The translations under genes were made by a program, and so were the position numbers. Positions 1,922 to 23,781 of a stretch of 26,399 nt of DNA are shown piece after piece. Each line of letters starts with the position of its first letter. The stretch's first letter is position 1. Below the pieces are notes generated by a model that was not told where the DNA came from, searched no databases, and was given only the letters and a program-made list of their open reading frames with translations. Source of the DNA: Macrostomum lignano. Lineage: Eukaryota. The stretch is taken from NCBI GenBank assembly GCA_002269645.1, contig NIVC01005093.1:1-26399 (forward strand), given 5' to 3'.

Positions 1922-4348
1922 GTTTTAATAGCTTGTATCTCTACTAGATTTGTATTTTGCATCTGATGAGTCATTTGAATCAGGGCTCTTATCTTCCATG
2001 CCAAATCATCTAGCAAGTGGAATTATTCTTGAGCTAGGGCCTATAAGTATAGGTGAATACATTATGAATTGTATCACACAATATTCACTATATTCATTTT
2101 ACTTTGACTTCTAGACATTCATGAATCATGACTTATGTAGTATGCTCACTAAACTGTATTAAGAAATTTACAAATTTCCTCACAGGCACCTGCCACTAGA
2201 TGGCATACAGATTAGCTATTATAAAAACACAAGTAATCTACATGGTATCCTAATTAGCTGATGAGGCATAATTAGCCTTAAAAATATAGTCATAGTAAAT
2301 CCTGCTATTTATCCAAAAGTATGTTTATTTTGCTTTGCTATTTTAGAGGTAACTCATATTTTTTATTACCAACTGTCGCATGGCCAGCATTATTTAGGAG
2401 TTTGCACATGTATATGCAACAAGGTCCACCCAGGCAATCTAGTACTGCATGTAAGATGTAATGATGTATGGTGTGTAGCAAGGAGAATTCTTTAGGCTTT
2501 TGAAAATATATGACAAACGTAATGAATTCACAAACGTACAGTACACGTTGGTGGATTTGTAGGTGGTTGCACTGGTTGGTTCAGATCGAGAATCAAGATC
2601 TAACAGATGAGCTACAGTAACATTTTCTTATCAGATATCCGAGATCTAGTTGAAGAATGTGCCGGCATTTGAAATTTTGACAATTTATAAACAAATCATC
2701 CAACACAAATATGCAGAAAAATTTTAGTCCTAGTTAAAAAGGCTTTTAAAGTTAAATTTAAAATAGGCCTAATATTAATAATCCAATGGTAAATTGTTCC
2801 ACGACAATCAAATTTGGTACAAACTTAATTCCCTTAGAGCTTGATGTTTAATATTATAATTTAAAGTACATGTTTGATCATTACCTTTCCTCACAGAAAA
2901 GTACAAAACTCTAAAGATTAATAAAAAGCAGTTGTTAAATTCTGAAAGAATTGGAGAGGCAATAAGAAGTAAAAAAGAGGTATAAAAGGATTAAGGTAGA
3001 CTTGCTCCTTTTCTTGCAAATTAAAATATAACAAAAGAACTGCTGTAGGACGAAAGTATAGGGTTTAGCAGTTCTGTAACATTTCAGAAAATGCTGTCAG
3101 AAATTTCTTTGTTTGTACTAACCAAATTTGATAAAGTACAGTAAACGGTTGTGTGCAAAACAACAACAACAAAAACAAAAACGACAACAACAAAAACAGC
3201 AAAAAATTACATTGTCAGCCAGTCAAGCGTAGGAAAATGTCATAGGGCGCGTTTTAAGGACTGGGCGCGAACGTATAGGCCGCACCGCCTGCGCGGTGCA
3301 CCTGCATCAGCCAGCTATGTAGCAAGGAAGGCAGTCAAGAGGTCCACGAAACGCCCGCCCGTAAGTAGGGCGGGCGCGTCAGCAGTATGCAGCACCTCCT
3401 GCACTGGCTGTGGGCAGTGCGACTCGGCTCACATAAAATCGCCTGCCAGCTAGAGCTAACAACAGTAATTGCTGGGATGGCAACAGGCCGGTGCGGTGAT
3501 CGCGTATATGCGTATCAATCTTTGACTACGAGCTAAAATAAAAGCTACATATACACGATTTTAGTACGTATTCATTTCCCGATTGACATTCAGATTCACA
3601 TTCAAATTTTAACAAAGCCGCTGTAACCTTTCTTTACTTGAACGAAACGCTTTAAAATTTTACAAAAACTTTGACGCAATCAAGAAAAAAACCTACGTAA
3701 AATATCTCAGCATTTAAAAATTGACTGTACAAATTATTCACATATAAAGTTTGTTCCTATCTCCTTAGTGTATTATTATGCAACTCAACAAAACGGCTTA
3801 AAATACACGCAGAGCTACGAAACTTTATTTTTCTCTTGACGCATGCGAGATGCGTTGGCAAGTCAAAAATCAGCACCCTAGCTTAAAGCCTGTACGAGTT
3901 ATTCACCTGCAAACTGTGTTCCTATCTCCGTAGTGTATTTTAGGGGTCCAGCTTGACATTCGCTGAGAACCACTATATTGCTGTATAAAAACTGGAAAAT
4001 TAGGACGGGTGAAAATTCATATCTCGAGCAACTGTTTATTTTCAAAACAAATTAACATTTTTCAAAGCGTAACTTAAAGCGGGAAATTAAAGCAATGAAC
4101 GGAACAAAAATTTTTAAAGAAAAACATCATGCATCAAGAAGCATAAATAAATTTTGCGCTGTATGGCTTAATCTGCATGCTTAGAAAAGTACTAAGAGAT
4201 TTTTAGTGCATTTTGTAGAAGAAGAAAAACATCATGTACTAGAGGAAGGAAATAAATTATTTAGAGTTGGACGAGAATTCTTTTATTGAAATGGCAAGTA
4301 AATAATTTAAGCCTTCGAAACCTTTAGCTCAATTAGCTCATTCCTGCT

Positions 4349-4862
4349 TTTTGTGTCGTAACTAGGAGCCCGTAAAAGGGCCGTTCGTCTAACTAACCTT
4401 TTCTTACTTTTTCTTACTACTCTACTTTAAGTAGTGCAGTTAATAAATTATTCGTATATTGTATTGTGAAACGTATTTTTAATCACGTGACATTTTGGCG
4501 GTCGAATTTATCGATCGTGTAACAATTTACTGTTAAATATCAAATATAAGCGCGGGTTGCCCTAAGTGGAGCTCGTACCTTTTTTTCCGGCAAAAAGTCT
4601 TACCTGCCACTCGTGTTTCCTGTGTTAGTCTGCTGAGACACCACATTGGCGACGAGGATGGGATACGAACCCACGCGGGGAAACCCAATGGATTAGCAGT
4701 CCAGGGAGGGGGGAAATGTTGTGTCGTGACTAGGAGCCCGTAAAAGGGCCGTTCGTCTAACTAACCTTTTCTTACTTATTCTTACTACTCTACAGTAGTG
4801 CAGTTAAGAAAAAGTAACAATTGTCGAAAAAACGAAAAATGTAGAAAAATAACGACACAACA
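4349..4862 (+). mobile_element. Miniature non-autonomous LTR retroelement (TRIM-like, 514 bp) nested in the MULE
   Basis: 5' LTR 4349-4645 (T[T]TTGTGTC...GACACCACA). PBS TGGCGACGAGGATGGGAT at 4647-4664. PPT GGGAGGGGGGAAA at 4704-4716, abutting TGTTGTGTCG at 4717. 4717-4807 repeats 4349-4443 with 3 substitutions and a 4-bp indel. Element ends ...ACGACACAACA at 4862. 5-bp TSD CTGCT at 4344-4348 and 4863-4867. Confidence 0.88.
4647..4703 (-). tRNA. 3' part (positions 28-76 including CCA) of tRNA-Ser(GCU); non-functional retro-copy serving as an extended PBS
   Basis: Minus strand reads TGGAC-T-GCT-AATCCAT (anticodon arm), TGGGTTTCCCC (long variable arm), GCGTGGGTTCGTATCCCATCCTCGTCG-CCA (T arm, acceptor strand, CCA). 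This matches the conserved animal tRNA-Ser(GCU) 3' half. The D arm and 5' acceptor strand are absent. Confidence 0.85.
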
Positions 4863-5301
4863 CTGCTCACTGGCATAAAACGAATCTGTTACTCGTACAT
4901 GAGCTAGGAATAAAATCCACGAAATTATATAAATTAGATTACAGTATTTACACTTTCCGCCTCTGTTGTCTGGACAGTGACTAAGATTCAGGGAATTCAT
5001 CTAATGGGAAACATATGACGGGATAGAAAGTTCACAAATTCGGCTCTGGTTATAGCTGGGTCACCCACCTGAGCCTGAAAAATAATTTCTGTACGGACCC
5101 CTGCCACACATCCCTTATGAGCACGCATCGCATCATTTTTACGCTGCTTTAGTGGGGTCCTCATGATCGGGAGTTGTTTGAGCCATCTGGTGTAGCCCGG
5201 AAGTCGAAAACGGGACTCATAGGAAGTCTGCTACACCATGCAGCCATGCAGAAGACTTTTTAAACAGTTGGATCCTCTTTCTGTGAATGATGAAGAGGTG
5301 A

Positions 5302-5570: not shown

Positions 5571-5687
5571 GAACTGATGAAGATACGCCCGTACTAGCGC
5601 ATTAGACTACAAAAACCATTGTACTTTAAGGGAACGTCAGAACGTTAGCTCTTTTGTTTTCAGATGATCAGATGTCAGAAAAATAAA

Positions 5688-6584
5688 GTTTCATAGCTCT
5701 ACGTTGAGTAGAAGTGTCTGTCAGCGAATGTCAAGCTGGACCCCCAAAATACACTACGGAGATAGGAACACAGTTTGCAGGTGAATAACTCGTACAGGCT
5801 TTAAGCTAGGGTGCTGATTTTTGACTTGCCAACGCATCTCGCGTGCGTCAAGAGAAAAATAAAGTTTCGTAGCTCTGCGTTGAGTAGAAGTGTCTGTCAG
5901 CGAATGTCAAGCTGGACCCCCAAAATACACTACGGAGATAGGAACACAGTTTGCAGGTGAATAACTCGTACAGGCTTTAAGCTAGGGTGCTGATTTTTGA
6001 CTTGCCAACGCATCTCGCATGCGTCAAGAGGAAAATAAAGTTTCGTAGCTCTGCGTTGAGTAGAAGTGTCTGTCAGCGAATGTCAAGCTGGACCCCCAAA
6101 ATACACTACGGAGATAGGAACACAGTTTGCAGGTGAATAACTCGTACAGGCTTTAAGCTAGGGTGCTGATTTTTGACTTGCCAACGCATCTCGCATGCGT
6201 CAAGAGAAAAATAAAGTTTCGTAGCTCTGCGTTGAGTAGAAGTGTCTGTCAGCGAATGTCAAGCTGGACCCCCAAAATACACTACGGAGATAGGAACACA
6301 GTTTGCAGGTGAATAACTCGTACAGGCTTTAAGCTAGGGTGCTGATTTTTGACTTGCCAACGCATCTCGCGTGCGTCAAGAGAAAAATAAAGTTTCGTAG
6401 CTCTGCGTTGAGTAGAAGTGTCTGTCAGCGAATGTCAAGCTGGACCCCCAAAATACACTACGGAGATAGGAACACAGGTTGCAGGTGAATAACTCGTACA
6501 GGCTTTAAGCTAGGGTGCTGATTTTTGACTTGCCAACGCATCTCGCATGCGTCAAGAGAAAAATAAAGTTTCGTAGCTCTGCGT
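5688..6584. repeat. 176-bp tandem repeat, ~5 near-identical copies, derived from the inner part of the MULE right TIR
   Basis: TGAGTAGAAG recurs at 5705, 5881, 6057, 6233 and 6409 (period 176). Each unit is 160 bp of TIR sequence plus the 16-bp spacer TGAGTAGAAGTGTCTG. Confidence 0.95.
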
Positions 6585-7841
6585 GTATTTTAAGCCGTTT
6601 TGTTGAGTTGCATAATAATACACTAAGGAGATAGGAACAAACTTTATATGTGAATAATTTGTACAGTCTATTTTTTAATGCTGAGATATTTTACGTAGTT
6701 TTTTTCTTGATTGCGTCAAAGTTTTTGTAAAATTTTAAAGCGTTTCGTTCAAGTAAAGAAAAGTTACAGCGGCTTTGTTAAAATTTGAATGTGAATCTGA
6801 ATGTCAATCGGGAAATGAATACGTGATTTTAGTGACAGATAAGTTTGCTATATATTGCTATTAATTATATATAGTACGTGAAAAATTTACGAAAAACTGC
6901 AATTTTTCATCATTTAGAACGCTTAAACACTATTTGTAGCTGTGCTGTGGTGCTCTCTAAAATTAGTTTTATTACTGACAAACGTTCATGCAATTGCGGA
7001 TTGTGGGATGCCACACTGTCTTTACATATACATTTTTGCATCTTTAAAAACGACGTACCAATAACGTACTTGTGCAATAAAGACATAGAGACGTTTGTAC
7101 TTGTAAATAGCTCGTACTACATACAAAAGACAGTACATGGTACACACGGAACTTCTGATAAAAAAGAATCACAAAGACAAGGGCAAAGTATAGGGATCGA
7201 AGCTGGGGGCTATGATGATATTTTTCCAATCCAAATTTTAATATGTGAATTTTGACAGGTGATTATAAATATCAATCAAAACATCTCTGGTATATGTCTG
7301 ATTGAGTAATTTAAGTTAAAAAGATTTGAAAATTACAAATATTTGCGAATATTTATAGCTATTGTGGGCTCGTGCGAGAAGCGATCGCGAGTTATCGAAC
7401 ACTTATATATAGTTCGATAACCCTCGATAACAATACGAGCGTATTACGAGAGTTTACTATAGATGTCCCTTCTACATGCATGCAGCGACGTCCTGAGACG
7501 TCGGGTACGCCGCAGAAGCGTAGGCGGACATTGAAATTTTCCACGGAAAGTGAAACAGACTGGACAAAGTGTACGTAAGCAACATTTTTCGATAGATTAG
7601 TATGCGCAGGTAGTAAGATAGTATAGGAAAAGACATTTGTTAGTCATATCTAAGTTTTATTATGTACATGTTAAGCCTCATTTGAAACGTTTTGATAGTA
7701 CACTTTATTTGATTGGCTATCCATCCTTGACCTGACAACCATGCCATATTTTTGCTATAAAGTTATTCTCAAGTCTTTTCGTCAGGCTAGCTATCATGCC
7801 TTACATGTACATGTAGCTTCAGTCCCGAAAGCTTGCATTAT

Positions 7842-10378
7842 TCACTCCACTAGAATCATCATTCGAATGCTTTTTAGCGACACAAAAGCATTATCAATGG
7901 CATACCAAGTAATGTACTTGTGATGACGAATCTCGCCGCTAACAAACAGTCCATTAGGATTGGTGTAGAAGCAGCTCTTGAACCACCATCCCGACGCGCT
8001 GGCGTAGTTAATCGAGCAGGAAAATGAACTAGCCTGATCGTTATCACGGTCCATAGTGGAGAACATCATGCCTCGGCTCCTCTCGGCCAGTCCGTCGGTG
8101 GCGATGTTGGACCTCTCGGTGGCGTAGCGACTGTAGCTCAGCAGGTAGTTGGTCGACGAGTTGCCCACCTGAAAGCCGTCGTACTCGCAGTGGAACTGAG
8201 AGCCGTCCCATTTGGTCAGTTCAAAGCGTACGGTTGCTCCGGCGCCGTTATTGCCCGTGTCGCCATATGTGGTGAGTCGGTGCAGTTGTTTGAGTCCTGC
8301 ATTGCAATATTAAGGATTATTATATTGCATGTACTCGGGAAAAGACTGAGTGAGAGTGACAGCTTGATGAGTAAAGAGCGCCGTGTCTCTTTGTTGGCGC
8401 CGCTGTTTCTTGGTAGGCATCCTGTTTCTTGGTGGGCGCCCTGTCTCTTGGTGGGCGCCCTGTCTCTTGGTAGGCGCCCTGTCTCTTGGTGGGCGCCCCT
8501 GTCTCTTAGTGGGTGCCCTGTCTCTTGGTGGGCGCCCTGTCTCTTGGTGGGCGCCCTGTCTCTTGGTGGGCGCCCCTGTCTCTTAGTGGGTGCCCTGTCT
8601 CTTGGTGGGCGCCCTGTCTCTTAGTGGGTGCCCTGTCTCTTGGTGGGCGCCCCTGTCTCTTGGTGGGCGCCACTGTCTCTTGGTGGGCGCCCATGTCTCT
8701 TTGTGGGCACCCCTGTCTCTTGGTAGGCGCCCCCTGTCTCTTGGTAGGCGCCCCTGTCTCTTGGTGGGCGCCCCTGTCTCTTGGTGGGCGCCCCTGTCTC
8801 TTGGTAGGAGCCCCTGTCTCTTGGTGGGCACCCCTGGCTCTTGGTGGGCGCAGCCGTCTCTCCTGGTGGGCGCCCCCTGTCTCTTGGTAGGCGCCCCTGT
8901 CTCTTGTTGGGCGCCCCTGTCTCTTGTTGGGCGCCCCTGTCTCTTGGTAGGAGCCCCTGTCTCTTGGTGGGCGCCCCTGTCTCTTGGTAGGAGCCCTATC
9001 TCTTGGTGGGCGCCCCTGTCTCTTGGTAGGAGCCCCTGTCTCTTGGTGGGCGCCCCTGTCTCTTGGTAGGAGCCCCTATCTCTTGGTGGGCGCCCCTGTC
9101 TCTTGGTAGGAGCCCCTGTCTCTTGGTGGGCGCCCCTGTCTCTTGGTAGGAGCCCCTGTCTCTTGGTGGGCACCCTGTCTCTTTTTGTGGGCACCCTAAC
9201 CCCTGGTTTCTAGGCCGGTGCATGCCACGACCGAGAGATAGCAAAAGTTGATGAGCTCCCGTCATTCATCGAGTTCAGGTTACCTGTTTCATTTAGTTTT
9301 TGGAGAAGCGAGAAAAACAACCCTAGTTGGGGTAACGGAGGCTTTGAGCACAATTGCAAATTAAGGCCACAGTCGCCAGCGAAGAGGCAAAGCAGTCATG
9401 CCAATTCCACACCCGGTTACGTTCGAGCGTTACGCTCTCACATACGCTGGTAGACTACCAGACTAATTTCCTTGAACGAGTGATAAATTAAGGGGGTCCA
9501 GTGCAGAATCGCACTCAGCAACCCCACCACAGGCCCCCTACATGCAGAATCCACCAAGCACAAGCCCTATTGTCTTCCCAAGAGAGCCACCTGTCCAGAA
9601 GTTGTCCGCATCGCCAAATCCTGTTTCGTAGTCTAGCCAGGTCCGGCTGAAGTTCACGCTGGCAGACAGACGCTGCTGCAGTAGGCAGAAGCGACGGGAG
9701 CCGATCCAGCGCACGCGACAATCCGGAAATTCGTCAGTTCGATCTGTGTGGTTTTAAATTGTCAGCTTGAATTGAGTTGGAACAAATCGTATCCAAGGAC
9801 CACAAGAAGTTACCGTTGTATCTTCATAACTACGGTTACGATAACTGTTGTTACTGTTGTTGCTACGGTGACTTCTTGTGGTCTTCGATGGTAACTTTAT
9901 GTATTAGTGACTTACACAGCTTCATGAGCTCACAGCCATTAGGCAAGTAGCTGTGGCTTATGTCGCTAACGTTGTACATCAGGCAGAGTCCATTAGGCAG
10001 TCTGCACACCGATTTGCAATGCCTTTTGTGCCTATTCAGAGCGCACAGCTGCAGACACTGCGAGAGACTGTCCGATGGAGTCACGGTTGACACCGTTGCG
10101 ATGGATGCATTGATACCAGGATTTGGAGCGATTGACAAGAAGCCGAAGGTGCCTAAAGTTTATGTACAGGTATCTATGATACAGTAAAGATAAGAATATC
10201 CGTTGTTTTTGGTGCGTACAAAGCGACCAAGCATTATATAATGCACTACAGATCACAACGCATGCTAAATTTAAGCATATTACTTACTCGTACTTCTGGA
10301 TGTCTCACAAGAAAATACTGTTTGGTCATGGCATACGAGACTTGCCATGGCAACCAAAAGCTGGAGCAGCAGTTGCAT
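7842..10378 (-). CDS. Secreted PAN/apple-like + fibrinogen C-terminal domain (FReD) protein, 4 exons, 311 aa: join(10288-10378, 9916-10152, 9591-9743, 7842-8296)
   Basis: Exon 1: signal peptide MQLLLQLLVAMASLVCHDQ..., donor GTAAGT. Exon 2: SLSQCLQLCALN...CKSVCRLPNGLCLMY (PAN-like Cys spacing), donor GTAAGT. Exon 3: LLQQRLSASVNFSRTWLDYETGFGDADNFWT. Exon 4: GLKQLHRLT...FSTMDRDND...GWWFKSC..NPNG...SLKSIRMMI (FReD hallmarks). All introns are GT-AG and phase 1. Exon total 936 nt is in frame with no internal stop. Confidence 0.88.
8378..9196. repeat. GC-rich minisatellite, 19-21-bp unit CCTGTCTCTTGGTGGGCGCC, about 40 copies, in intron 3 of the FReD gene
   Basis: Direct inspection. It generates the spurious repetitive ORFs at 8190-9265. 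Confidence 0.95.
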
Positions 10379-12354: not shown

Positions 12355-13758
12355 ATGGCAGACATTTTCAAGCAGTTGTACAGCATTAACATTGTCAACT
12401 ACATCGGAGTCGAGGACTTCTCAGACCGGTTGAACTTTCTCTACACAGCAACACTTCTCACGATTTGCTGCACGATAACAATCGGCAGAGGCTACGTCAT
12501 GCACCCGATCAGCTGCTATTTGCCCAACACCTTCGGCAGCTATCACGAAGAGAAAGACATGAAAGGCCAGCTGGACTTCGTCAACAACTACTGCTGGTCC
12601 GAGGGTACGTACGCTGTGGATGTGAGAGAGTTCCACCTAGAGGGCACGTCAGATAGCGGCGGCCTCGAGCTGTACGCGGACAGGAAGATCAACTTCTACC
12701 AATGGGTGCCATTTGTGCTGGCGCTGCAGGGTCTGTGCTTCTACCTACCCAGAGTGATCTGGCACGCTGTGAGCTTCGGCCGGGCCGGCACCGACGTCGG
12801 ACACATTGTCAAGGTGGCGCGTGACGCGTCGCGCGCCGACGACAAGAAGCACGACCGATTGCTGAACCACGCCTGCCGCATGGTTGAGCAGATGCTGGAC
12901 AGGCAGGCGAACAAAGCCCGACCGGACGACCAGAGCCAGCTTGAAGGCATCCGGCGGGCCTGCAATCGATGCCTAGCGATTGTCATGCCGACGCGTTTTG
13001 TTGGCAGCGGGCTTATATTTACCTACCTGCTAATCAAGCTGACTTACATTGGAAACGCAATCGGTCAGTTAGCTCTAATGCAGAACTTTTTGCAGCTGAA
13101 TTCAACTCGCTATAGTCTACTCGGCATTAAATTGCTTGACGACATCATCTGGGGCAAGGACTGGCACAATACTATCGTGTTTCCTAGAATAGGCTGTTGC
13201 GCAGTCTACCTTCGCTCCGCTGCTCGCGGTAACTGGCAGTTCTCGCAGTGCTCCCTGCCAGTCAATATGATCTACGAGAAAATCTACGTATTTCTATGGT
13301 TCTGGTTTATTTTCGTTGCGTTGGCAACCATTTTCAGTACAATATCCTGGATCTGGAGATTGTGCAATGCGGCTATGAGCAGCAGATTTGTGCGCAAGTA
13401 CCTCAAGCTGGCCGACAACTACGAGGAGCTGAAGAAATCCGGTCAGGTGAAGGGCTTCGTTAGAAACTTTCTACGTCGAGACGGCGCCTTCCTAATGAAG
13501 ATGATCGCGCTGAATTGCGGTGATCTAATCTGCGCGGAGGTCATCCAGACGCTTTGGTTGCGCTACAAAAAAGCCAAAGGCTTCATAGCCCTGGATGAGG
13601 CCCAGCAGGAAAATCTCGAGAATGCGGTGCTGAAGCTCAGCTGCAAAAATTTGCCGCTGTCGACTGATAATAAGACTCGGCGTCGGTTTTTCCATCGTCA
13701 GCAGAGCCTACCGGTTAATTCGCTGTTCCGGCATGAGGAAGGCGACCCCAAAGCGTGA
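12355..13758 (+). CDS. inx: Innexin (innexin A), 467 aa, intronless CDS
   Basis: VEDFSDRLN before TM1. EL1 cysteines in ISCYLP and NYCWSEGT. FYQWVPF at TM2. EL2 FPRIGCC and QCSLPVN. EKIYVFLWFW at TM4. C-terminal FL..DG.FL..I..N.GDL motif. Confidence 0.97.
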   Translation: MADIFKQLYSINIVNYIGVEDFSDRLNFLYTATLLTICCTITIGRGYVMHPISCYLPNTFGSYHEEKDMKGQLDFVNNYCWSEGTYAVDVREFHLEGTSDSGGLELYADRKINFYQWVPFVLALQGLCFYLPRVIWHAVSFGRAGTDVGHIVKVARDASRADDKKHDRLLNHACRMVEQMLDRQANKARPDDQSQLEGIRRACNRCLAIVMPTRFVGSGLIFTYLLIKLTYIGNAIGQLALMQNFLQLNSTRYSLLGIKLLDDIIWGKDWHNTIVFPRIGCCAVYLRSAARGNWQFSQCSLPVNMIYEKIYVFLWFWFIFVALATIFSTISWIWRLCNAAMSSRFVRKYLKLADNYEELKKSGQVKGFVRNFLRRDGAFLMKMIALNCGDLICAEVIQTLWLRYKKAKGFIALDEAQQENLENAVLKLSCKNLPLSTDNKTRRRFFHRQQSLPVNSLFRHEEGDPKA

Positions 13759-15387: not shown

Positions 15388-16869
15388 CTAAGTTGTCGTT
15401 GAAATGCTTCTCTGATAAATCAGCCTGCGCCGCTTCTGATTAGCGGACTTGTCTTCGACGTCCAATCCGATGTCTTCGTCGACTTCCGAAGCCGGGGGCG
15501 CCGAAGGCTCCGCCGGTGGTTGGTGTGTCACCGGCTGCAACAGCAGCTTCGGTTTCTTGACTCTGGCCTGTTCTGGCAGTCCAGCAGTGGAGATGACCAC
15601 GAGGTTCTTGACTGAGACGCCTTGGTCTCCATGTGTCTCCTCGGCCTTGTGCACTCCGTTGGACCGCAGGAAGCGGATCCAGAGGCGGCGAAGAATTTCC
15701 GTGCAGGCCAGATCGCCGCAGTTTAGCGCAATCATTTTTAACAAAAAGGTGCCATCGTTTCTAAGAAACTCCAGTTCGAACTTCTTCAGCCAAGGATTGT
15801 TGCGCAACTGGTTGTAGTTATCCGCCAGCTTGAGGTACTGCTTTACAAAGCTGCTGCGCCGGTGACCATGGCTGTAAATGCGAACAACCCAGACGAGAAT
15901 GCTAATTGCTGTGGCCGAAGCTACAAATACCATCCAGAACCACAGGAAGATGTAGATCTTCTCATTGATCATGTTGATTGGAAGGGCGCACTGCGACATC
16001 TGCCAGTTGCCGACGCCAGCCGTTTTCATGTAGACAGCGCACGATCCTACTCTCGGGAACACCATGCTGTTCTCCCAGTAAATTCCGCTGCTCAGGTCGC
16101 CAAGAAGTCTCAGTCCGAAGAGTCCGTACTCAGTGTTGTTTAGATTCAAGAATCTTTGCATGATGACCAGCTGGCAGGAGGCGTTGATAAAGTACAGCGT
16201 TTTGATGGCGAGGTAGCTGCATATGATCGTATTGCCTTGCGGCTGAGTTGACAGTACCAGGCCAAACCGGTTTAGCGCCAGTTGTTGGACTGACCTCAGA
16301 GCCGAGTAATGGCTAAACTGATGACTGCGACTGAGTAGCTGCTCAAGCCTTGCACAGGCGTGCTGCATCAACTTGTTGTGCTTCTCCCTATCGGCCTGGA
16401 TAGCGTCGCGAACTGTGCGCACGATGTGAGCAACGTCCGTACCGGAGCGCTGATTAGTGATGAAGTTCCACAGCACGCGGGGCAAGTAGAACATGATGCA
16501 CTGCACGCCCAGCACCAAGGGCACCCATTGGTAGTAGGTGATTCGCTTGTCCCGGTAGCGGCCCAGTCCGCCGTCCTTTTGCGTGGCGTCGATGCTGAAC
16601 TGTCTCGGGTGGACGGCAAACGTGCCCTCCGTCCAGCAATAGTTGTTCACAAACAGTTCTTGACCTGCTGTGCCAGAGCCAAACATGTTCGGTATGTAGC
16701 AGGCCAGCGGGTGAAAGACGTAGGTTCGAACTGTGACCACCGAACAACATACTAGAAGTACGGTGACAGTAAACAGAAAATTTAATCGGTCAGGGAAATC
16801 CTCGAGTCCGATGTAGTTGAAGGCTTTCGGCAGAGCCTTGTACTGGTTGATGAGCTCGTTTGCCACCAT
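15388..16869 (-). CDS. inx: Innexin (innexin B), 493 aa, intronless CDS
   Basis: LEDFPDRLN, LACYIP, NYCWTEGT, YYQWVP, FPRVGSC, QCALPIN, EKIYIFLWFW, FLRNDGTFLLKMIALNCGDL. Confidence 0.97.
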   Translation of the reverse strand: MVANELINQYKALPKAFNYIGLEDFPDRLNFLFTVTVLLVCCSVVTVRTYVFHPLACYIPNMFGSGTAGQELFVNNYCWTEGTFAVHPRQFSIDATQKDGGLGRYRDKRITYYQWVPLVLGVQCIMFYLPRVLWNFITNQRSGTDVAHIVRTVRDAIQADREKHNKLMQHACARLEQLLSRSHQFSHYSALRSVQQLALNRFGLVLSTQPQGNTIICSYLAIKTLYFINASCQLVIMQRFLNLNNTEYGLFGLRLLGDLSSGIYWENSMVFPRVGSCAVYMKTAGVGNWQMSQCALPINMINEKIYIFLWFWMVFVASATAISILVWVVRIYSHGHRRSSFVKQYLKLADNYNQLRNNPWLKKFELEFLRNDGTFLLKMIALNCGDLACTEILRRLWIRFLRSNGVHKAEETHGDQGVSVKNLVVISTAGLPEQARVKKPKLLLQPVTHQPPAEPSAPPASEVDEDIGLDVEDKSANQKRRRLIYQRSISTTT

Positions 16870-17870
16870 TTTGAGGCAAAAGGCTTGCTATTCTCGATCG
16901 GCTGAAGCTGAAATGGTTTTAAAGTATGAGTTTATGTATCACTGTGGCACGATCGAGCGTTTCTCGCTTAATACTGTCTAGTGGCCAATGGATGGTTCGA
17001 CAAGGCGACCAAATTCTCGGGACAAGCTGGAAGAAAAACTGAGGAAAGGGGAGAGGGGAGAGATCTCTACGTATGGAGGCTTTCCCAATGCACGCACACT
17101 TTGGTAATCCCAAAATTTACAACACTGGGGGGGAGGGGCAGTCAGCCTGCATTGCTGTACAGTCAACACAAATAGCGGGACGAACGAACGTTCCTTAGAG
17201 GGTAGAGAAGGTTAAATCGATTGTACACTCGGAAAGGAAAAAGTATCAGTTGCTATCTTTATACGCATTCTTATCGTGTATTAACATAATATAGCTGCTT
17301 CCTATATGCTCTAAAATAGCTTGTCAGCTGAAAATACCATTCTCGCGCATGTATTCACATAAATGATGCATTGCAAATTACAGAGATATAATACTTACAC
17401 AGAAATAAATATTACAGGCACTTAGTTGCAAGATACACGCAGAAATACAAAAATTCTTGGATACTTTCGGACTGTAAGAGTCAATAAAAAATGAAACATG
17501 CAAAAAATTATGAGAATACATCTGACAAATGGCACATGTGATACATGCAATCTGTGCGATATTTCTCAAAAGAAAGATACTGTAGAGCAAACTGTATTTA
17601 CAAACTTACTGAAAGTAAAAGTTCAGAAAGTTTCTCACGGGACTGCTGTACCATCTTTGACCTTTTTTATTCACTCTAATATAAAGTTACGAGTACATGC
17701 AGCTTATTCACCCAGTTCAATCTCATCCTCGGAGTGACCGAAGTTCTCTGAAATTGCCGATTCAATTCTGACAATGCTGCTAGACACTAGGTAGCTCAAT
17801 GATTATGCCAAACTGATGGAAGACCGACATTTCACTGCCATTGCGGTATTCGACTGCCGACATTTTAGGC

Positions 17871-17915
17871 TAGGGTTAGGGTGGGGTTAGGGTGGGGTTA
17901 GGGTGGGGTTAGGGT
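17871..17915 (+). repeat. Telomere-like G-rich repeat (GGTTAGGGTGG)n, G-quadruplex-competent, inside a possible small MITE (about 17824-17975)
   Basis: TAGGGTTAGGGTGGGGTTAGGGTGGGGTTAGGGTGGGGTTAGGGT contains 8 G-runs. Flanking 9-bp inverted repeat TCACTGCCA (17832-17840) / TGGCAGTGA (17957-17965). Confidence 0.75.
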
Positions 17916-18104: not shown

Positions 18105-22174
<4,070 letters not shown>

Positions 22175-23536: not shown

Positions 23537-23781
23537 TGACCTCTCAGCAATTCCCCGTAAGCCTTGACATCTCAGAAATTCCCCCCATAAGCCTTGACAA
23601 CTCAGCAATTCCCCCGTAAGCCTTGACATCTCAGCAATTCCCCCCAAGCCTTGACATCTCAGCAATTCCCCCCAAGCCTTGACATCTCCGCAATCCCCCC
23701 GTAAGCCTTGACATCTCAGCAATTCCCCCCAAGCCTTGACATCTCAGCAATTCCCCCGTAAGCCTTGACATCTCAGCAATT
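23537..23781. repeat. 28-30-bp minisatellite TGACATCTCAGCAATTCCCCC(GT)AAGCCT, ~8.5 copies
   Basis: Direct inspection. Units vary mainly in the C-run and the presence of GT. Confidence 0.93.

What the first reader, a model, noticed from the sequence alone, without database searches (positions are those of the whole stretch)
4647..4716. Molecular fossil of reverse transcription through a modified tRNA: PBS extended to 57 nt with A58 to T at the m1A site
Seen: the tRNA-Ser(GCU) complement includes CCA, which eukaryotes add post-transcriptionally, so the template was mature tRNA. It runs 57 nt instead of the canonical 18. Base 19 (4665) corresponds to tRNA position 58 and gives T-loop TTCGTAT instead of the invariant TTCGAAT. 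The copy ends at tRNA position 28 and joins directly to the PPT. Established: m1A58 is the normal stop for plus-strand strong-stop synthesis in LTR elements and causes misincorporation when read through; m2,2G26 is a strong RT block. Inference: RT read through m1A58, miscoded it, stalled just before G26 and jumped to the PPT. This deleted all of gag-pol and created a mini-element whose whole interior is primer tRNA. It suggests a direct route for TRIM birth and leaves a DNA record of tRNA modifications.
Basis: partly seen in the sequence, partly recalled or inferred. Interest (0 to 1): 0.85.

Follow-up and report, generated by a model that had tools for sequence, protein, structure and literature searches.

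The report
Mini LTR element built from primer tRNA
A dead, 514-bp miniature LTR retrotransposon in the flatworm Macrostomum lignano has an interior made only of a 57-nt DNA copy of its tRNA-Ser primer plus the polypurine tract, showing that reverse transcriptase ran far past its normal stop on the tRNA; similar relics turn up in other animals' DNA.

Summary
Window 4647-4703 is a gap-free complement of the 3' 57 nt of a mature tRNA-Ser(GCU), CCA included. It has T instead of A at tRNA position 58. It sits 1 nt after an LTR end and directly before a 13-nt polypurine tract and a second LTR. The whole unit (4349-4862) is flanked by a 5-bp duplication, CTGCT.

Orientation, CCA and position show that plus-strand synthesis copied the primer tRNA 39 nt past the m1A58 stop.

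Three parts are not shown:
- that this insertion was the founding event;
- that T58 is a miscoding rather than later decay (about 1.2 random substitutions are expected in 57 nt);
- that m2,2G26 caused the stop.

A metagenome scan found 11 unrelated LTR families with 28-85-nt tRNA-Ser(GCU) copies:
- one family with gag, protease and RT carries a 40-nt copy;
- two have tRNA copies fused directly to gag or RT with deletions;
- one is a second mini-element.

Primer over-extension is therefore recurrent and can be inherited. I found no description of such genomic relics. It is a new variant of known kinds (TRIM, primer over-extension sequence, aberrant LTR junctions).

The parts
4344..4348 (.). Left copy of the 5-bp target-site duplication CTGCT
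   Evidence: Read directly in the sequence; identical to 4863-4867.
4349..4645 (+). 5' LTR (LTR1), 297 nt, TtTTGTGTCG...GAGACACCACA. The second base has mutated from G to T. AATAAA lies at 4442-4447, exactly where homology with LTR2 stops.
   Evidence: Direct repeat with 4717-4811. It ends in CA, 1 nt before the tRNA complement.
4646..4646 (+). Single-nucleotide spacer (T) between the LTR end and the primer-binding site
   Evidence: Comparable spacers of 1-9 nt occur in the metagenome elements.
4647..4664 (+). Canonical 18-nt primer-binding site (complement of tRNA positions 76-59, CCA included)
4665..4665 (+). Complement of tRNA position 58: A on the + strand, so T in tRNA sense where A is expected
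   Evidence: The real gene L019 and 10 of 13 retro-copies have A58.
4647..4703 (-). 57-nt tRNA-Ser(GCU) sequence (tRNA sense on the minus strand), positions 28-76: anticodon arm, variable arm, T arm, acceptor 3' strand, G73, CCA
   Evidence: Rfam tRNA alignment; pairwise alignments.
4704..4716 (+). Polypurine tract GGGAGGGGGGAAA, the whole of the remaining interior
   Evidence: Read directly in the sequence; immediately followed by the LTR start TGTTG.
4717..4862 (+). 3' LTR (LTR2), 146 nt, TGTTGTGTCGT...ACGACACAACA, with perfect 11-bp terminal inverted repeats. Only 4717-4811 is homologous to LTR1. The tail 4812-4862 is A-rich and unrelated apart from its last ~9 nt.
4863..4867 (.). Right copy of the target-site duplication CTGCT

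Best explanation
Window 4349-4862 is an inert, non-coding, TRIM-like miniature LTR retroelement in Macrostomum lignano. Its 71-bp interior holds nothing but the footprints of the two replication primers.

Core claim, which follows from the anatomy plus established retroelement biology: plus-strand strong-stop DNA was primed at the polypurine tract (PPT). It copied U3-R-U5 and then the tRNA-Ser(GCU) primer still attached to the minus strand. It did not stop after 18 nt at position 58 but ran on to position 28.

Most likely route (inference): the non-complementary 3' end could not make the normal second strand transfer. It was instead extended on a PPT-U3 region of a minus-strand DNA, probably from a related co-packaged template, which would explain the unequal LTRs. 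This gave LTR-tRNA57-PPT-LTR, which integrase inserted with a 5-bp duplication.

The T at position 58 is more likely than not a dA inserted opposite (m1)A58 during that read-through.

The event may have happened in this insertion or in an ancestor of it. The copy is now dead: the 5' TG has mutated to TT, and the two LTRs share no sequence in their 3' portions, where the shared repeat (R) needed for first-strand transfer probably lay.
For: - The sense strand carries the tRNA complement directly after the LTR end. The minus strand therefore carries tRNA sense exactly where the primer sits.
- CCA is present, so the template was mature tRNA.
- PPT, TG...CA termini and the 5-bp duplication are all present. 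No ORF exceeds 51 aa.
- m1A58 is the documented main stop. Unmodified tRNA is copied to its 5' end, and minor stops further along are known (PMC13191261; PMC8599865).
- The metagenome scan found 22 LTR-linked loci in 11 LTR families with 28-85-nt copies of the same tRNA.
- L016 carries a complete 85-nt copy plus one extra C, fused to gag with 642 nt lost relative to its sister L010. L004 carries a 40-nt copy fused to the RT domain. L014 is a second mini-element: copy to position 33, then 26 nt, then the 3' LTR.
- Two unrelated families stop at position 33, one base before C32.
- Position 58 is G, G or C in 3 of 13 other copies. A to T fits the m1A-A signature.
Against: - Only one copy of this family is available. 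Its parent and its copy number are unknown.
- LTR divergence (K = 0.043) predicts 1.24 random substitutions in 57 nt, so T58 could be decay.
- The metagenome pattern allowed variation only at position 58. Unconstrained position 49 varies just as often (3 of 13), so enrichment at 58 is not demonstrated.
- C32 and A37 were copied correctly, although m3C32 and t6A37 are blocks in other eukaryotes.
- The copy ends at 28, one base short of the usual stop before m2,2G26.
- Nothing explains why a template switch should land exactly at the 5' edge of the PPT.
- The LTR2 tail (4812-4862) has no identified source.
Confidence: 0.6

Rival explanations
1. Junction of primer-retaining ends. The interior is an end-to-end junction, as in an aberrant 2-LTR circle or a head-to-tail concatemer. 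One side is a U5 end whose plus strand had copied the unremoved tRNA primer to position 28. The other is a U3 end that kept its 13-nt PPT primer. Transcription from the upstream LTR across this junction to the next LTR gives R-U5-PBS57-PPT-U3-R. This minimal genome was then reverse transcribed and integrated in trans.
For: - Both inner boundaries are natural primer termini, and nothing else lies between them.
- HIV-1 2-LTR junctions with unprocessed U5 and U3 plus inserted PBS and PPT sequences are documented (PMC5618025).
- Transcripts crossing 2-LTR junctions are documented (PMC11680205).
Against: - It needs several extra steps: circle transcription, packaging and trans-mobilisation.
- Retrotransposition of such an RNA would produce identical LTRs, which is not what is seen.
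- It cannot explain L016 and L004, where tRNA copies are fused to gag or RT. A template-switch route therefore exists in any case.
Confidence: 0.2
2. Inherited long PBS. The family, or its coding partner, already carried a long tRNA-Ser(GCU) complement as a heritable over-extension sequence. The mini-element is one copy of an established TRIM lineage or an ordinary internal-deletion derivative. T58 is then a later point mutation, or neutral drift at a site that cannot pair with m1A anyway.
For: - L010/L020 carry a 40-nt copy followed by leader, gag, protease and RT.
- L022 is a conventional TRIM-like element with a 36-nt copy, 5-bp duplication and LTRs 95.6% identical.
- Lentiviruses and spumaviruses carry a short primer over-extension sequence.
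- About 1.24 random substitutions are expected in 57 nt.
Against: - An independent deletion would have to start exactly at the end of tRNA homology and end exactly at the PPT.
- A random hit on position 58 has a probability of only about 2%.
- Within one LTR family (L010, L016, L018) the tRNA copies differ in length and sequence. This argues for repeated fresh copying rather than simple inheritance.
Confidence: 0.25
3. Not a primer footprint. The stretch is a tRNA gene fragment, a tRNA-derived SINE, a LINE-made tRNA retropseudogene, or a tRNA picked up by minus-strand template switching, lying by chance between two LTR fragments.
For: tRNA sequences can enter retroviral genomes by minus-strand switching (HITME recombination, cited). 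tRNA retropseudogenes with CCA exist (from memory).
Against: - The copy starts 1 nt after the LTR's terminal CA with the CCA complement. It is antisense to the element, lacks the tRNA 5' half and A box, and abuts a PPT and an LTR start.
- Minus-strand capture would put tRNA sense on the element's sense strand.
- The same arrangement recurs in 11 unrelated LTR families.
Confidence: 0.02

Closest known systems
TRIM (terminal-repeat retrotransposon in miniature)
   Same: Two short direct LTRs, an interior holding only a PBS and a PPT, no ORF, a 5-bp target duplication and a total length of 514 bp.
   Different: The interior is only 71 bp and is essentially a primer-tRNA copy. The LTRs are unequal (297 and 146 nt, homologous over ~95 nt). 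Copy number and trans-mobilisation are unknown.
Primer over-extension sequence of lentiviruses and spumaviruses (Muthuswami et al. 2002, as summarised in PMC13191261)
   Same: Complementarity to the primer tRNA continues just downstream of the 18-nt PBS. It reflects plus-strand synthesis running past m1A58.
   Different: The known sequence spans a few nucleotides, to positions 55/54. Here 39 extra nucleotides reach position 28, and related elements reach up to the whole tRNA.
Aberrant 2-LTR circle junctions with retained PBS/tRNA and PPT sequences (HIV-1, PMC5618025; MLV circle of Colicelli and Goff 1986)
   Same: The same order, U5 - tRNA-derived sequence - PPT - U3, produced by copying or retaining the two primers.
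   Different: Those are unintegrated episomal by-products. Here the junction lies between two LTRs of a chromosomal insertion with a target duplication.
Helenus / TRIMp3 (Kojima 2024, PMC10886601)
   Same: Miniature LTR elements that contain tRNA-derived sequence. Some use tRNA-Ser primers.
   Different: Helenus carries a tRNA-like pol III promoter inside the LTR, in sense orientation. It probably came from a SINE insertion and is not complementary to its PBS. Here the tRNA sequence is antisense, internal and continuous with the PBS.
Hairpin-induced tRNA-mediated recombination in HIV-1 (Konstantinova et al. 2006, cited in PMC12220202)
   Same: 63-65 nt of a cellular tRNA are incorporated into a retroelement genome, together with a deletion.
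   Different: That tRNA is copied during minus-strand synthesis at an internal site. It is not the primer and would lie in the opposite orientation.

Membership tests
LTR retrotransposon (class I, LTR order) | Direct terminal repeats with TG...CA termini | tested here: met
   LTR2 runs TGTTG...CAACA. LTR1 runs TtTTG...CCACA, with one mutated base. The direct repeat 4349-4447 / 4717-4811 is 96% identical.
LTR retrotransposon (class I, LTR order) | PBS complementary to a tRNA 3' end immediately after the 5' LTR | tested here: met
   The complement of tRNA-Ser(GCU) including CCA starts 1 nt after the LTR end.
LTR retrotransposon (class I, LTR order) | Polypurine tract immediately before the 3' LTR | tested here: met
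   GGGAGGGGGGAAA at 4704-4716.
LTR retrotransposon (class I, LTR order) | Target-site duplication of 4-6 bp | tested here: met
   CTGCT at 4344-4348 and 4863-4867.
LTR retrotransposon (class I, LTR order) | Superfamily assignment (Gypsy, BEL or Copia) from pol | not testable with these tools
   The element has no coding sequence. Its LTRs match none of the fetched loci.
TRIM | No coding capacity; interior limited to PBS and PPT; total size well under 1.5 kb | tested here: met
   The interior is 71 bp and the element 514 bp. The longest ORF is 51 aa.
TRIM | Two near-identical LTRs over their full length | tested here: not met
   Only the first ~95 nt are homologous. LTR1 is 297 nt and LTR2 146 nt.
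TRIM | Multi-copy family mobilised in trans by an autonomous partner | not testable with these tools
   No search of the M. lignano genome was possible. There is no other copy in the window. LTR-word and pseudo-ORF searches found nothing.
m1A58 reverse-transcription miscoding footprint | The changed base lies at tRNA position 58, and the host tRNA has A there | tested here: inconclusive
   The position is confirmed. A58 is present in a real tRNA-Ser(GCU) gene from another organism and in 10 of 13 retro-copies. The M. lignano gene itself was not available.
m1A58 reverse-transcription miscoding footprint | The substitution type matches the known m1A signature | tested here: met
   A to T in RNA sense. 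An m1A-A context gives T or G with little C (PMC4787781).
m1A58 reverse-transcription miscoding footprint | Excess of changes at 58 over neighbouring positions in independent copies | tested here: inconclusive
   3 of 13 other copies differ at 58, but the scan pattern fixed positions 76-59 and 57-51. Free position 49 also varies in 3 of 13.
m1A58 reverse-transcription miscoding footprint | tRNA-Ser(GCU) of the host actually carries m1A58 | not testable with these tools
   This needs tRNA sequencing of M. lignano. In human cells 87% of tRNAs are highly modified at this position (PMC5066629).
Helenus / TRIMp3 | tRNA-like sequence with pol III boxes inside the LTR, in sense orientation | tested here: not met
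   The tRNA sequence is internal, antisense and lacks the 5' half. ARAGORN finds no tRNA in the LTRs.

The most novel reading that the evidence does not exclude
Over-extension of plus-strand synthesis on the primer tRNA is a general, recurrent source of 5'-deleted and miniature (TRIM-type) LTR elements in animals. The resulting long PBS regions would then be a genome-encoded archive of primer-tRNA modification. The signs would be miscoding at m1A58, miscoding or deletion at the variable-loop site that is m3C47d in human tRNA-Ser, and copy ends just before C32, A37 and G26. Modification states of unstudied or uncultured animals could then be read from genome sequence alone.
Probability: 0.35. 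Interest if true: 0.8.

Novelty: new variant of a known kind. Interest (0 to 1): 0.6.

Why it matters
- Retrovirology treats m1A58 as the device that sets PBS length, and treats over-extended products as dead ends. These relics show that over-extended products do reach the germline.
- They can be inherited. One family with gag, protease and RT carries a 40-nt copy.
- They coincide with deletions that strip coding sequence, down to a two-primer mini-element. This offers a concrete, testable origin for TRIMs.
- If the position-specific changes hold up against host tRNA genes, LTR elements would provide a sequence-only readout of tRNA modification across animals.

Tried and rejected
- ARAGORN on the window and on the paralogous contig found no tRNA gene to compare with.
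- A whole-window Rfam scan gave only an antisense artefact. The Plastid-psbI-rps4 model overlaps plastid trnS-GCU.
- The paralogous M. lignano contig NIVC01000712.1 (L002) was fetched to look for an empty site or a second copy. It is 99.6-100% identical to the window but stops 1.8 kb short of the element. The look-up that could have reached it was collapsed as a duplicate place.
- An LTR 24-mer was scanned against metagenome and prokaryote genome contigs: no hits.
- A protein search with a stop-free translation across LTR1-tRNA-PPT, meant to catch spurious gene calls on other copies, found nothing.
- A pattern with a free T-loop, run on viral and prokaryote collections, hit only phage tRNA genes and chance matches in bacterial coding sequence.
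- A fuzzy search of all fetched loci for degraded copies added nothing.
- I tested whether LTR2 is a snap-back palindrome of its own 5' part. Only the 11-bp ends and ~37 nt near the centre pair, and the global alignment is poor, so I rejected it.
- I tested whether LTR2 is LTR1 with a simple internal deletion. The 51-nt tail has no counterpart in LTR1, so I rejected it.
- Joined flanks were used to look for an uninterrupted copy of the target site within the window: none.
- Colicelli and Goff 1986 is not held in the library.
- Literature searches found no paper describing genomic LTR elements with tRNA copies much longer than 18 nt used as modification records.

Full report
**Source.** The window is the whole contig NIVC01005093.1 of assembly GCA_002269645.1. 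NIVC01 is the Mlig_3_7 genome of the flatworm Macrostomum lignano (PMC5730564), in which LTR retrotransposons make up about 21% of the DNA.

**Check of the observation.**
- Bases 4647-4703 on the + strand are an uninterrupted complement of the 3' 57 nt of a class-II tRNA-Ser(GCU). The stretch covers CCA, discriminator G73, the acceptor 3' strand, the T arm, a 12-nt variable arm and the anticodon arm with GCT, ending at position 28.
- Rfam's tRNA model aligns the minus strand as a 5'-truncated tRNA.
- Outside the variable arm the copy matches a real tRNA-Ser(GCU) gene from an unrelated organism (L019) at 43 of 45 positions. The two differences are at positions 43 and 58.
- Base 4665 turns the T-loop TTCGAAT into TTCGTAT.
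- ARAGORN finds no intact tRNA in the window.

**Anatomy around it**.

| Feature | Coordinates | Notes |
|---|---|---|
| Target duplication (left) | 4344-4348 | CTGCT |
| LTR1 | 4349-4645 | 297 nt, ends ...ACCACA |
| Spacer | 4646 | T |
| tRNA copy | 4647-4703 | 57 nt |
| Polypurine tract (PPT) | 4704-4716 | GGGAGGGGGGAAA |
| LTR2 | 4717-4862 | 146 nt, TGTTGTGTCGT...ACGACACAACA, perfect 11-bp inverted termini |
| Target duplication (right) | 4863-4867 | CTGCT |

- No ORF exceeds 51 aa.
- The two LTRs align only over 4349-4447 / 4717-4811, with 4 substitutions in 95 nt and a 4-nt indel.
- Homology stops at an AATAAA hexamer (4442-4447).
- The 51-nt A-rich tail of LTR2 has no counterpart in LTR1 except its last ~9 nt.
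- No other copy of the LTR lies in the window.

**What the tRNA stretch must be.**
- The element's sense strand carries the tRNA complement. Its minus strand therefore carries tRNA sense directly 5' of U5, which is where the primer sits.
- The primer serves as a template in only one step, plus-strand strong-stop synthesis. That step normally ends after 18 nt at m1A58. Unmodified tRNA is copied to its 5' end, and minor stops occur further along (PMC13191261; PMC8599865).
- CCA shows the template was mature tRNA.
- Capture of a tRNA during minus-strand synthesis, a SINE or a gene fragment would each give the wrong orientation or position.
- I regard this core inference as secure (about 0.9).

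**Related sequences.**
- I could not search the M. lignano genome. The second contig with the same locus stops 1.8 kb short of the element.
- An LTR word and a pseudo-ORF found nothing in the public collections.
- A metagenome scan for CCA plus 23 nt of the tRNA-Ser(GCU) complement, with position 58 left free, returned 23 loci. One (L019) is a real tRNA gene inside a cluster of 41 tRNA genes.
- The other 22 lie 1-9 nt after LTR-like ends (...ACAACA and similar). By LTR similarity they fall into 11 families, with 13 distinct tRNA-copy variants. None is related to the window's LTR.
- Copy lengths correspond to last-copied tRNA positions of about 49, 47, the variable arm (several), 45 (twice), 44, 42, 38, 33 (twice) and 1.

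**Informative cases among the 22 loci.**
1. L010/L020 carry a 40-nt copy followed by a leader, a 313-aa gag-like ORF, an aspartic protease and RT. An element with coding sequence can therefore carry and transmit a long tRNA match.
2. L016 has an LTR 92% identical to L010. It carries the entire tRNA (85 nt, called tRNA-Ser gct by ARAGORN) plus one extra C. It then resumes at L010 nt 1259, so 642 nt of leader and gag are replaced.
3. L004/L006/L021 are one locus sampled three times. A 40-nt copy plus one G is joined straight to the RT domain (FNDWGTPVVP...), with gag and protease missing.
4. L014 is a second mini-element: a copy to position 33, then 26 nt, then a 3' LTR 83% identical to the 5' LTR.
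5. L022 is a conventional TRIM-like element with a 36-nt copy, LTRs 95.6% identical and a 5-bp duplication TTGAC.

Cases 2 and 3 are best explained by an over-extended plus strand whose 3' end was extended at a non-homologous internal site.

**How the window's element most likely arose.** Two routes give LTR-tRNA copy-PPT-LTR.

*Route A, template switch.* The over-extended strong-stop DNA switched onto the PPT-U3 region of a minus-strand DNA.
- For: the direct fusions in L016 and L004. A switch onto a related co-packaged template would also explain the unequal LTRs.
- Against: it gives no reason for landing exactly at the 5' edge of the PPT.

*Route B, joining of ends.* Two ends that both kept their primers were joined: a U5 end with the tRNA copied, and a U3 end with the PPT retained. 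The junction was then transcribed and the mini-RNA retrotransposed.
- For: it explains both inner boundaries. It also has direct precedents: HIV 2-LTR junctions with PBS and PPT inserts (PMC5618025) and transcripts that cross such junctions (PMC11680205).
- Against: it needs more steps and predicts identical LTRs.

I favour A (about 0.4) over B (about 0.2). A further 0.25 goes to the possibility that the long PBS was inherited and this copy is merely a descendant or a deletion derivative.

**Position 58.**
- A to T in RNA sense means dA was inserted opposite the template base. This fits the m1A signature in an m1A-A context (PMC4787781).
- Most human tRNAs are highly m1A58-modified (PMC5066629).
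- Among the 13 other copies, position 58 is A in ten, G in two (L010/L020 and L018/L026) and C in one (L013).
- Three cautions apply.
  - My pattern fixed every other position from 76 to 51, so variation could only appear at 58.
  - Unconstrained position 49 varies in 3 of 13 as well.
  - The divergence between the window's LTRs (K = 0.043) predicts 1.24 random substitutions in 57 nt. One mismatch is therefore unremarkable, and only its location (about 2% by chance) is informative.
- I put the miscoding reading at about 0.65-0.7.

**The stop at position 28.** It is compatible with a block at m2,2G26 but lies one base short of the usual stop. The copy also passes C32 and A37 unchanged. Both are blocking sites (m3C32, t6A37) in other eukaryotes. 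Two unrelated families end at position 33, just before C32, and one ends at 38, just before A37. Stops on this tRNA therefore look non-random, but the numbers are small.

**A possible second footprint (untested).**
- The middle base of the variable loop is the m3C47d site in human tRNA-Ser (PMC5066629). It is C in the real gene L019.
- It is T, T and A in the window, L013 and L014.
- In the other copies with a GTGC-type variable arm it is absent, T, A, absent, A and A. No retro-copy has C.
- Within the single L010/L016/L018 LTR family it takes three states, while the flanking stem stays constant.
- Without the host tRNA genes this remains a lead.
- Relative to L013 and L014 the window copy also has one G fewer in the variable stem.

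**Comparison with what is known.**
- The element works like a TRIM, but fails the full-length LTR identity criterion and has unknown copy number.
- Its long PBS is an extreme form of the lentiviral and spumaviral primer over-extension sequence.
- Its interior has the same order as aberrant 2-LTR circle junctions.
- It is not a Helenus-type element, where tRNA-like sequence lies inside the LTR in sense orientation (PMC10886601).
- My literature searches found no description of chromosomal LTR elements with 28-85-nt primer copies, of deletion derivatives fused at the end of the copy, or of their use as modification records. The library is incomplete, so this absence is weak evidence.

**Verdict.**
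It is plausible but unproven on m1A58 miscoding and the G26 stop. It overreaches in treating this insertion as the birth event.
- I rate it a new variant of known kinds. Interest is moderate to high, mainly because the phenomenon proved recurrent across unrelated elements.

Noticed in passing
window 3566-3974 and 5677-6824: Large inverted repeat (arms 97-99% complementary). The right arm contains five tandem 176-bp units (5677-6584) that are inverted copies of 3807-3974. This foldback-like structure encloses the mini-element and about 1.2 kb of unique sequence.
   Followed up: partly
window 12355-13758 (+), 15388-16869 (-), 18105-22174 (-): Cluster of innexin genes. Two are intact single-exon ORFs (467 and 493 aa). 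A third is split into an N-terminal part (21188-22174) and a C-terminal part (18105-18626). About 2.5 kb separates them, including a 1.5-kb (ATAG)n microsatellite at 19655-21150.
   Followed up: partly
L002:15079-16396 (NIVC01000712.1), corresponding to window 11791/11792: The near-identical second copy of this locus carries an extra 1.3-kb mariner-like DNA transposon with 28-bp inverted termini and a degraded transposase ORF. It is absent from the window, so the insertion is polymorphic between the duplicated regions.
   Followed up: partly
window 8384-9183: 40 tandem copies of a 20-bp GC-rich unit (TGTCTCTTGGTGGGCGCCCC). They create long spurious ORFs on both strands.
   Followed up: no
window 7842-8168 (-): Isolated ORF fragment matching the C-terminal part of the fibrinogen globular domain (Pfam Fibrinogen_C, E = 1.4e-16). 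It is probably an exon or a gene remnant.
   Followed up: partly
window 17865-17915 and 23537-23781: Short tandem arrays: TTAGGGTGGGG x 4.6 (telomere-like) and a 28/57/85-bp repeat x 8.6.
   Followed up: no
window 4650-4696 (+): The Rfam hit to 'Plastid-psbI-rps4 3'UTR' (26 bits, below the family's threshold) is an artefact. The model evidently overlaps the antisense of plastid trnS-GCU and so picks up any tRNA-Ser(GCU) complement.
   Followed up: yes
L016:4359-4444 (Ga0210059_1035646): A complete, CCA-bearing, antisense tRNA-Ser(GCU) copy sits at the PBS position of an LTR element, followed by one extra C and then mid-gag sequence. ARAGORN annotates it as a tRNA gene, so such relics may be miscounted as tRNA genes in genome annotation.
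   Followed up: yes
L019:1-7204 (ERZ1046148 contig): 7.2-kb contig with 41 tRNA genes for many amino acids, apparently a tandemly duplicated array of about 5.4 kb. The organism is unknown.
   Followed up: no
window 4442-4447 versus 4806-4811: Homology between the two LTRs ends at an AATAAA hexamer in LTR1. The unmatched tail of LTR2 is A-rich (GAAAAAG...GAAAAAACGAAAAATG...GAAAAATAA). A link to the polyadenylation site or tail is possible but untested.
   Followed up: no
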